A DNA stretch of 63,854 bases, filler included, from Bigelowiella natans CCMP2755 (taxonomy: Eukaryota; Protista; Cercozoa), in the NCBI GenBank assembly GCA_000320545.1. It is 9 parts of 9 records of this genome, joined end to end, with 100 filler letters (N's around TTAATTAATTAA, not from the genome) between each part and the next. Parts side by side here need not be neighbours in the genome. Positions count along the whole stretch, not along the records: positions 37,331 to 54,244 come from ADNK01002870.1; 8 more parts are not named here. One strand, 5' to 3'. A model generated the notes under the pieces. It saw only the letters and a program-made list of their open reading frames with translations, was not told where the DNA came from and made no database searches. The position numbers and the translations under genes were made by a program. Positions 45,617-46,076 of the stretch are shown piece after piece (the stretch's first letter is position 1; the number at the start of each line of letters is the position of its first letter).

Positions 45617-46076
45617 ATGGCTAGACGGTGCGATCCACAGCTAGACGGCAGCCACATTCTGAACACATCAATGATTGCATTGTGCACCTAGAAGCGCCAT
45701 GCATCTAGGCATGCATGCTAGCTCATGGCTAGATGGCCACGTAGATCTAGAGATGCATGGCTCATGCGGATGGCACACATTCATGCAGACATGACTAGAT
45801 GAAGCGCGCTGCCGCCATGCCATGATGTGGCATGTGCAAATGAATGAATGCAGCTGCACGCCGCAGTCATGCATGCGCGCAGGAAACAATGAATGAATAA
45901 AGAGCATCCTAGCATCGCATGTTGCTCTGGACTGCTCTAGTACTAGACTGGTGGATAGCAAATTTACATGTTGGGTATTGCAGATCCATCAGTTTAAATT
46001 GCACATCTGTATGAACACACACAAGGGTGTACGTGCACACGTACCACGCTAGCACGCTCAGCGCTGTGCTAGTGAG
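45617..46076. other. Cluster of XXXX-CTAG-XXXX insertion scars
   Basis: 13 CTAG in about 455 bp; 6 flanked by exact 4-bp direct repeats, 3 by 3/4 matches. Confidence 0.9.

What the first reader, a model, noticed from the sequence alone, without database searches (positions are those of the whole stretch)
45617..46076. XXXX-CTAG-XXXX scars: a stereotyped 8-bp insertion with 4-bp target duplication
Seen, exact: GCAT (45701), ATGG (45725), AGAT (45743), ATGA (45791), CATC (45905), CACG (46045), plus CGTG (44590), CTTG (9953), CTGG (32619) and eight more at 50368-51078. Near matches often differ by a transition (ATGG/ACGG, ACAG/ACGG). Chance is about 1/256 per CTAG, yet about half the CTAGs here match. 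The duplicated 4-mer varies and the core is constant. Established: cut-and-paste transposons leave the TSD plus terminal bases (Tc1-type footprints). Inference: either footprints of an unknown element with CT...AG or CTAG...CTAG ends and 4-bp TSDs, or a dedicated break-and-ligate mutagenesis system. Each event shifts frame and places TAG on both strands, which is efficient gene inactivation. No intact donor element was found in the window.
Basis: partly seen in the sequence, partly recalled or inferred. Interest (0 to 1): 0.95.

Follow-up and report, generated by a model that had tools for sequence, protein, structure and literature searches.

The report
Eight-base CTAG insertion scars in Bigelowiella

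Summary
In the 16.9-kb piece, 17 of 84 CTAGs have the same 4-mer on both sides; shuffles give 0.2, at most 2. Twelve more match at 3 of 4 positions. Only a 4-base flank works, and CTAG is the only non-repetitive core enriched.

These are true insertions. One sits inside an ankyrin-repeat reading frame, five sister repeat units lack the 8 bases, and leaving them out restores one continuous frame.

Other features fit repeated events over time:
- Events are nested.
- Older copies have decayed, mostly by transitions.
- One variant reads ACAT-CTAGCTAG-ACAT.
- The target shows a symmetric preference: first duplicated base almost never G, last almost never C.
- Events cluster in two CATG-rich intergenic islands.

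The DNA is Bigelowiella natans nuclear genome (99% match to a JGI gene model).

Best reading (about 0.55): excision footprints of a cut-and-paste transposon with a 4-bp target duplication and CTAG (or CT...AG) ends, rejoined through palindromic sticky ends. No donor element or transposase lies in the piece, so its family is unknown. A dedicated mutagenesis system has no support. No relevant paper was found.

The parts
38677..38688 (.). Scar CAGG-CTAG-CAGG, isolated, in apparently non-coding DNA
40392..40403 (.). Scar AAAG-CTAG-AAAG, isolated, in a purine-rich non-coding tract
44255..45318 (+). Single-exon ankyrin-repeat gene, from the ATG at 44255 to the stop at 45318. The 8-bp insertion splits it into two overlapping ORFs, 44006-44632 and 44569-45318, whose frames differ by +2.
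44590..44601 (.). Scar CGTG-CTAG-CGTG inside the ankyrin coding sequence. The 8 extra bases are absent from five sister repeat units.
45617..46076 (.). Cluster 1, just 3' of the ankyrin gene in a CATG/GCATGC-rich island. It has 13 CTAGs. Exact scars are at 45701-45712 (GCAT), 45725-45736 (ATGG), 45743-45754 (AGAT), 45791-45802 (ATGA), 45905-45916 (CATC) and 46045-46056 (CACG). One-mismatch scars are at 45617-45628, 45637-45648, 45933-45944 and 46065-46076.
45371..45517 (.). Decayed scars beside cluster 1, with exact 4-mer flanks but a core changed by one transition: ACTG-CTGG-ACTG (45371), ACCA-CTGG-ACCA (45399) and TGTG-CCAG-TGTG (45502). Another, ATCA-CTGG-ATCA, lies at 46214-46225.
50350..51102 (.). 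Cluster 2, in a non-coding CATG-rich island, with 29 CTAGs between 50354 and 51080. Exact scars are at 50368 (CATG), 50400 (ATTG), 50470 (CTCT), 50712 (TCTT), 50773 (ACTA) and 50931 (AGAT). One-mismatch scars are at 50350, 50573, 50795, 50804 and 50839. A decayed scar CAAA-CCAG-CAAA lies at 51087-51098.
50985..51004 (.). Nested events CATG-CTAG-CTAG-CTAG-CATG. An inner insertion used the earlier CTAG as its 4-bp target; peeling it off leaves an exact CATG-CTAG-CATG.
51029..51048 (.). Nested events AGTA-CTAG-CTAG-CTAG-AGTT, with the outer flanks matching at 3 of 4 positions
51063..51078 (.). Variant scar ACAT-CTAGCTAG-ACAT, with a doubled core and exact flanks
40887..41363 (-). Exon of a transglutaminase-like (Transglut_core2) gene. 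It is not part of the scars; it identified the organism as Bigelowiella natans.

Best explanation
These are excision footprints of a cut-and-paste DNA transposon family in the Bigelowiella natans nuclear genome. The element has not been identified.

Proposed steps:
1. The element inserts with 4-bp staggered cuts at a loosely palindromic target, giving a 4-bp target-site duplication.
2. On excision, the outermost bases of each element end stay on the donor flanks. This could be CTAG as a self-complementary 4-nt overhang, CTA/TAG pairing through TA, or CT plus AG.
3. The two flanks are ligated with almost no processing. The result is duplication-CTAG-duplication, a net gain of 8 bp.

Repeated insertion and excision in two permissive CATG-rich intergenic islands built the clusters, and the scars then decay by point mutation.

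Shown here: the 8 bp are insertions; the duplication is exactly 4 bp; the core is constant; events are nested and of different ages; the target preference is symmetric. Inferred: that a transposon was ever between the two halves, and the chemistry at its ends.
For: - Enrichment is about 50-80 fold over chance and specific to CTAG with a 4-bp flank.
- The excess of CTAG over shuffles (84 vs 57) about equals the number of scars.
- Direct proof of insertion: in the ankyrin gene the 8 bp are missing from five aligned sister repeat units, and leaving them out gives one continuous frame with a canonical repeat.
- Symmetric target preference, as expected for a transposase or integrase dimer cutting both strands 4 bp apart. 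Among 35 events the first duplicated base is G once and the last is C once (each p about 1e-3). The base before is C in 16 of 35, and the base after is G or A in 25 of 35.
- Nesting, including two insertions into earlier CTAG cores.
- A range of ages: 12 one-mismatch flanks, 8 of them transitions, and 6 cores decayed to CCAG or CTGG with exact flanks against 0.4-0.9 expected.
- The doubled-core variant ACAT-CTAGCTAG-ACAT fits filling-in instead of annealing of CTAG overhangs.
- Tc1/mariner elements leave 2-4 bp footprints between retained duplications and prefer palindromic targets (PMC7913693).
Against: - No intact or miniature donor with a 4-bp duplication and inverted-repeat ends, and no transposase domain, is in the 16.9 kb.
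- The footprints are unusually uniform. Apart from one doubled core, the clusters hold no variants with partial cores or eroded duplications. Most eukaryotic excision repair is messier, so the model needs sticky-end religation.
- From memory, no described eukaryotic superfamily combines an unspecific 4-bp duplication with CTAG ends and such footprints.
- A density of about 1 event per 40-80 bp inside the clusters is extreme for footprints.
- Only one locus of one assembly was examined.
Confidence: 0.55

Rival explanations
1. Direct insertion without an excised element. An integrase- or transposase-like enzyme, perhaps domesticated, makes 4-bp staggered breaks at preferred sites in open CATG-rich chromatin. 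A minimal CTAG unit, such as abutted element ends or a self-annealing oligonucleotide, is joined in, and gap filling makes the duplication.
For: The product is extremely uniform and no other footprint variants occur. No donor lies in the piece. Clustering in two islands is very tight. The target preference is symmetric.
Against: I know of no precedent for integration of a 4-bp substrate (from memory). A constant core is explained more simply as element ends. The doubled-core variant fits overhang filling after excision.
Confidence: 0.2
2. The 8-bp units are tolerated or removed downstream, for example by DNA elimination, RNA-level removal or frameshifting. Under this reading, interrupted genes such as the ankyrin gene remain functional.
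For: Both halves of the ankyrin frame are otherwise intact, with about 113 and 239 codons free of further stops.
Against: This rests on one case, which a recent insertion explains equally well. Eight bases is far below any known intron or eliminated sequence. At most 1 of about 35 events lies in recognisable coding sequence, which suggests selection against them there. No transcript data were available.
Confidence: 0.05
3. Repair of 4-bp staggered breaks not made by a transposon, such as trapped topoisomerase II. Fill-in and end joining of such breaks are known to give 4-bp duplications.
For: The duplication is exactly 4 bp. The events sit in promoter-like islands.
Against: That process gives plain tandem 4-bp duplications with no constant core. 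Plain 4-bp tandem duplications are not enriched in the piece: 77 seen against about 66 expected. Nothing in this model supplies CTAG.
Confidence: 0.05
4. An artefact of cloning, finishing or assembly, for example untrimmed linker or in-vitro transposon ends.
For: CTAG is a common restriction overhang and appears in stop-codon linkers. Raw reads could not be checked.
Against: Scars show point-mutation decay, nesting, a target preference, near-absence from coding sequence and clustering in two islands. The commercial in-vitro transposons I recall give 5- or 9-bp duplications, not 4. The scan's own linker is TTAATTAATTAA and lies outside the piece.
Confidence: 0.03

Closest known systems
Tc1/mariner (IS630-Tc1-mariner) excision footprints
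   Same: Both copies of the target duplication are kept, with a few constant bases from the element ends between them. The target preference is palindromic and the events shift the reading frame. Tc1/mariner footprints are 2-4 bp (PMC7913693).
   Different: The duplication here is 4 bp of nearly any sequence, not TA. The core is a perfect 4-bp palindrome and almost invariant. No Tc1/mariner-like element or transposase was seen.
piggyBac excision (4-nt TTAA overhangs religated)
   Same: The proposed chemistry is similar: self-complementary 4-nt overhangs on the donor flanks are ligated without processing, which would explain the uniform product (from memory of published piggyBac biochemistry).
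   Different: piggyBac targets TTAA and excises seamlessly, leaving no scar. Here the target is variable and 8 bp remain.
Eukaryotic DNA transposon superfamilies with 4-bp duplications (Sola, Ginger1, Chapaev-type CMC, Academ, Kolobok)
   Same: The duplication length is 4 bp (from memory of Repbase classifications; the superfamily names are confirmed in PMC4455052).
   Different: I know of no member with CTAG termini or with abundant stereotyped footprints. Membership cannot be tested without a donor element.
Topoisomerase II-associated 4-bp duplication signature
   Same: A 4-bp staggered break gives a 4-bp duplication.
   Different: It has no inserted constant core, and plain tandem 4-bp duplications are not enriched here.

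Membership tests
Cut-and-paste transposon excision footprint (generic) | Target-site duplication retained on both sides of the scar | tested here: met
   17 exact and 12 one-mismatch 4-bp direct repeats flank CTAG. Only a 4-base flank is enriched.
Cut-and-paste transposon excision footprint (generic) | The scar is extra DNA relative to the ancestral site | tested here: met
   The ankyrin repeat unit at 44579 has 8 bases that five sister units lack, and the frame is continuous without them.
Cut-and-paste transposon excision footprint (generic) | Donor elements exist whose terminal bases match the scar core and which carry the same duplication length | tested here: inconclusive
   None was found in 16.9 kb.
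Cut-and-paste transposon excision footprint (generic) | A matching transposase is encoded in the genome | not testable with these tools
   No transposase domain appears among the 18 ORFs scanned in the piece. The genome cannot be searched by organism.
Tc1/mariner | TA target-site duplication | tested here: not met
   The duplications are 4 bp and varied, for example CAGG, AAAG, CGTG, GCAT and ATGG.
piggyBac | TTAA target and seamless excision | tested here: not met
   The targets vary and an 8-bp scar remains. TTAA shows no flank enrichment.
Miniature inverted-repeat element (MITE) | An element of tens to hundreds of bp with terminal inverted repeats, present in many copies | tested here: not met
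   The inserted unit is 4 bp plus the duplication. Candidate longer CTAG...CTAG units with matching flanks are explained by frequent CATG and CTAG flanks and by nested scars.
Topoisomerase II 4-bp duplication signature | Plain tandem duplication with no inserted bases | tested here: not met
   A constant CTAG lies between the copies. Core-less 4-bp tandem duplications occur 77 times against about 66 expected.

The most novel reading that the evidence does not exclude
B. natans harbours a so far undescribed transposon superfamily, or a domesticated derivative that is still active. It would make 4-bp staggered cuts and have CTAG ends. Its activity would be a major, sequence-stereotyped mutational process that writes 8-bp stop-bearing scars at about 2 per kb locally, concentrated in CATG-rich regulatory islands. 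Such scars could be read genome-wide as a fossil record of transposition.
Probability: 0.25. Interest if true: 0.8.

Novelty: new variant of a known kind. Interest (0 to 1): 0.62.

Why it matters
If these are footprints, they are unusually clean and dense. They would give a countable, datable record of excision events in a little-studied lineage (Rhizaria, chlorarachniophytes). They would also point to a transposon with a combination of features not catalogued as far as I know: an unspecific 4-bp duplication, palindromic CTAG ends and sticky-end donor repair.

Each event adds a +2 frameshift and a TAG on both strands, so the process makes pseudogenes; one ankyrin gene is caught in that state. 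For annotation, the motif is a simple regular-expression flag for frameshifted genes and for hot spots of transposon traffic in this genome.

If no donor exists, the process itself would be a new kind of insertional mutagenesis.

Tried and rejected
- Chance or composition: rejected by shuffles and by the all-core, all-flank scan.
- Slippage or tandem duplication: rejected. Scars are not periodic, and most are not palindromic as a whole.
- Other cores such as CATG, GATC and TTAA: no flank enrichment.
- Variant footprints (partial cores, cores of 1-3 or 5-6 bases) in the clusters: none beyond microsatellites.
- Donor search in the piece (any 12-nt inverted ends with a 4-bp duplication; CT...AG ends with 10-nt inverted repeats; CTAG...CTAG pairs with matching flanks): only chance-level or nested-scar hits.
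- Rfam: nothing.
- Organism identification: exact look-up of the ankyrin ORF, a word-indexed search with a 158-aa exon and a search with the ankyrin ORF all gave nothing close. It was solved by the exhaustive representative search plus cluster names.
- Getting more B. natans or related DNA: exact-protein look-ups and a metagenome scan found nothing.
- Literature: several searches found no description of this motif. 'Bigelowiella' plus 'CTAG' gives one unrelated paper. The genome paper and the provirophage paper are not held.

Full report
**1. What is there**

The piece 37331-54244 (16,914 bases, no N) contains 84 CTAGs. For 17 of them the four bases before and the four bases after are identical. 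Twelve more match at three of four positions.

In 300 dinucleotide-preserving shuffles the mean number of exact cases was 0.22 and the maximum 2. The shuffles also hold only about 57 CTAGs, so the surplus of about 27 CTAGs equals the number of scars.

The effect is confined to a flank of exactly four bases. Lengths 3 and 5-8 give zero, and length 2 gives 4 against 5 expected. A scan of every core of 2-6 bases against every flank length of 2-9 finds no other enriched combination. The only other hits are GT-microsatellite patterns and register shifts of the same CTAG events.

In the finding's own 460 bases there are 13 CTAGs against about 1.5 expected, of which 6 are exact and 4 are near matches.

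**2. They are insertions**

One scar, CGTG-CTAG-CGTG at 44590-44601, lies inside an ankyrin-repeat coding region (Pfam Ank_2, E 4e-35). The region is split into two overlapping ORFs, 44006-44632 and 44569-45318, whose frames differ by +2.

An alignment of six repeat units of this gene shows eight extra bases only in the unit at 44579. Read without those eight bases, the frame runs uninterrupted from the ATG at 44255 to the stop at 45318, and the junction is a canonical repeat (...GRTPLIVASKGGHLAVVKTLLEKKAN...).

So the ancestral site was a single CGTG, and the event added CTAG plus a second CGTG. Neither half has further stops, so this event is probably recent.

**3. Repeated events over time**

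- Peeling exact scars uncovers a further exact one: CATG-CTAG-[CTAG-CTAG]-CATG at 50985-51004. An insertion used an earlier CTAG core as its target.
- AGTA-CTAGCTAGCTAG-AGTT at 51029-51048 is the same arrangement with one flank mismatch.
- Eight of the 12 one-mismatch flanks differ by a transition.
- Six sites have exact 4-mer flanks around a core changed by one transition: CCAG three times and CTGG three times, against 0.4-0.9 expected. Five of them lie beside the clusters.
- This makes about 35 events in 16.9 kb. From the ratio of one-mismatch to exact flanks, I estimate an average age of a few percent neutral divergence (my own calculation).
- One variant, ACAT-CTAGCTAG-ACAT (51063-51078), has a doubled core.
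- No other variants (partial cores, eroded duplications) occur in the clusters.

**4. Target choice**

I aligned the 35 reconstructed empty sites. The first duplicated base is G once and the last is C once (binomial p about 1e-3 each). The base before the duplication is C in 16 of 35, and the base after is G or A in 25 of 35.

The preference is a reverse-complement mirror image, roughly C|HNND|G. That is what a two-fold symmetric enzyme cutting both strands four bases apart would give.

**5. Where the scars lie**

Thirty-two of the 35 sites lie in or close beside two islands: 45617-46076, just 3' of the ankyrin gene, and 50350-51102. These are the only parts of the piece rich in CATG and GCATGC, with 8-13 CATG per 500 bases against 0-5 elsewhere.

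The two islands are not copies of each other. Only 18-20-base matches made of scars themselves link them.

No event other than the ankyrin one is in recognisable coding sequence. The isolated scars at 38677 and 40392 lie in stretches where frames on both strands are broken by stops.

**6. Whose DNA**

The piece has short exons, TA, CT and GT microsatellites, G and C runs of up to about 19, and about 50% G+C.

The exon 40887-41363 (minus strand, Transglut_core2) is 99% identical to a 293-residue protein. The source names that protein as Bigelowiella natans JGI model aug1.83_g18708. The next hit, at 71%, is from Bigelowiella longifila.

The piece is therefore nuclear DNA of the chlorarachniophyte alga B. 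natans, whose genome is 94.7 Mb with about 8 introns per gene and 12.9% repeats (table in PMC13746701). It is a free-living marine alga, so the broken ankyrin gene is not a toxin or effector of concern.

**7. Mechanism**

A constant core between two copies of a variable target is the classic form of a cut-and-paste excision footprint. The duplication made at insertion stays, and a few terminal bases of the element are left on the donor flanks. Tc1/mariner elements leave 2-4 bases in this way and prefer palindromic targets (PMC7913693).

Three end structures would give the observed product:
- CTAG...CTAG ends cut four bases inside, leaving self-complementary CTAG overhangs.
- CTA...TAG ends cut three bases inside, pairing through TA.
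- CT...AG ends cut two bases inside and joined blunt.

I favour the first because sticky-end ligation explains the near-perfect uniformity, as TTAA overhangs do for piggyBac (from memory). Filling in instead of annealing would give the observed CTAGCTAG variant.

The clustering could reflect preference for open or CATG-rich DNA, local re-insertion, weaker selection there, or a mix of these.

The insertion itself, the 4-bp stagger, the constant core and the symmetric target are shown. The existence of the element and the cutting positions at its ends are inferred.

**8. What is missing, and the rivals**

No donor and no transposase is in the piece, and no more of the genome could be fetched.

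- Direct insertion of a minimal CTAG unit by an integrase-like enzyme cannot be excluded. It would be the more novel answer.
- Topoisomerase II-type fill-in gives 4-bp duplications but no core, and plain 4-bp tandem duplications are not enriched.
- An artefact is unlikely given the decay, nesting, target bias and distribution. The scan's own linker is TTAATTAATTAA, outside the piece.
- Raw reads were not available.
- A dedicated gene-inactivation system is not supported by the distribution of events.

**9. Novelty**

Full-text searches for CTAG with footprints, target duplications, 4-bp duplications or Bigelowiella found no description of this motif. The library does not hold the genome paper or the provirophage paper, so prior mention cannot be ruled out.

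In kind this looks like transposon footprints. It differs from described cases in the combination of an unspecific 4-bp duplication, a palindromic CTAG core, near-invariant repair and very high local density. I rate it a new variant of a known kind and moderately to highly interesting, pending a genome-wide count and a search for the donor.

Noticed in passing
window 45331-46330 and 50331-51330: There are two islands very rich in CATG and GCATGC, with 8-13 CATG per 500 bases against 0-5 elsewhere. They coincide exactly with the CTAG-scar clusters. They may be regulatory or open-chromatin regions, or the preferred target of the inserting enzyme.
   Followed up: partly
window 45843-45854 and 45892-45902: Short tandem AATG runs (AATGAATGAATG) and GCATGCATGC lie inside cluster 1. 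Whether these are ordinary microsatellites or core-less 4-bp duplications from the same process is unclear.
   Followed up: no
window 42244-42277, 43138-43158, 53300-53325, 40562-40575, 52047-52060: There are long homopolymer runs of G or C (up to about 19 bases). (TA)n microsatellites of 18-36 units occur at six or more places: 37492, 39222, 48466, 51576, 52162 and 53407. This is a striking simple-repeat load for 17 kb.
   Followed up: no
window 44255-45318: An ankyrin-repeat gene is frameshifted by one scar but is otherwise free of stops on both sides. It is either a very young pseudogene or a gene that is somehow still read. No close homologue appeared in the protein database (best 39% identity).
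   Followed up: partly
window 51128-51185: A (CTA)n / CTACTACCACTA repeat lies directly after cluster 2. It contains CTA and TAG-like units, and its relation to the scars is unknown.
   Followed up: no
window 43582-43650 and 50400-50455: Two short units are bounded by CTAG...CTAG with the same 4-mer outside: ATTT around 61 bp and ATTG around 48 bp. This is the form expected of a tiny leftover element, but they are too few and too short to tell from chance or from adjacent scars.
   Followed up: partly
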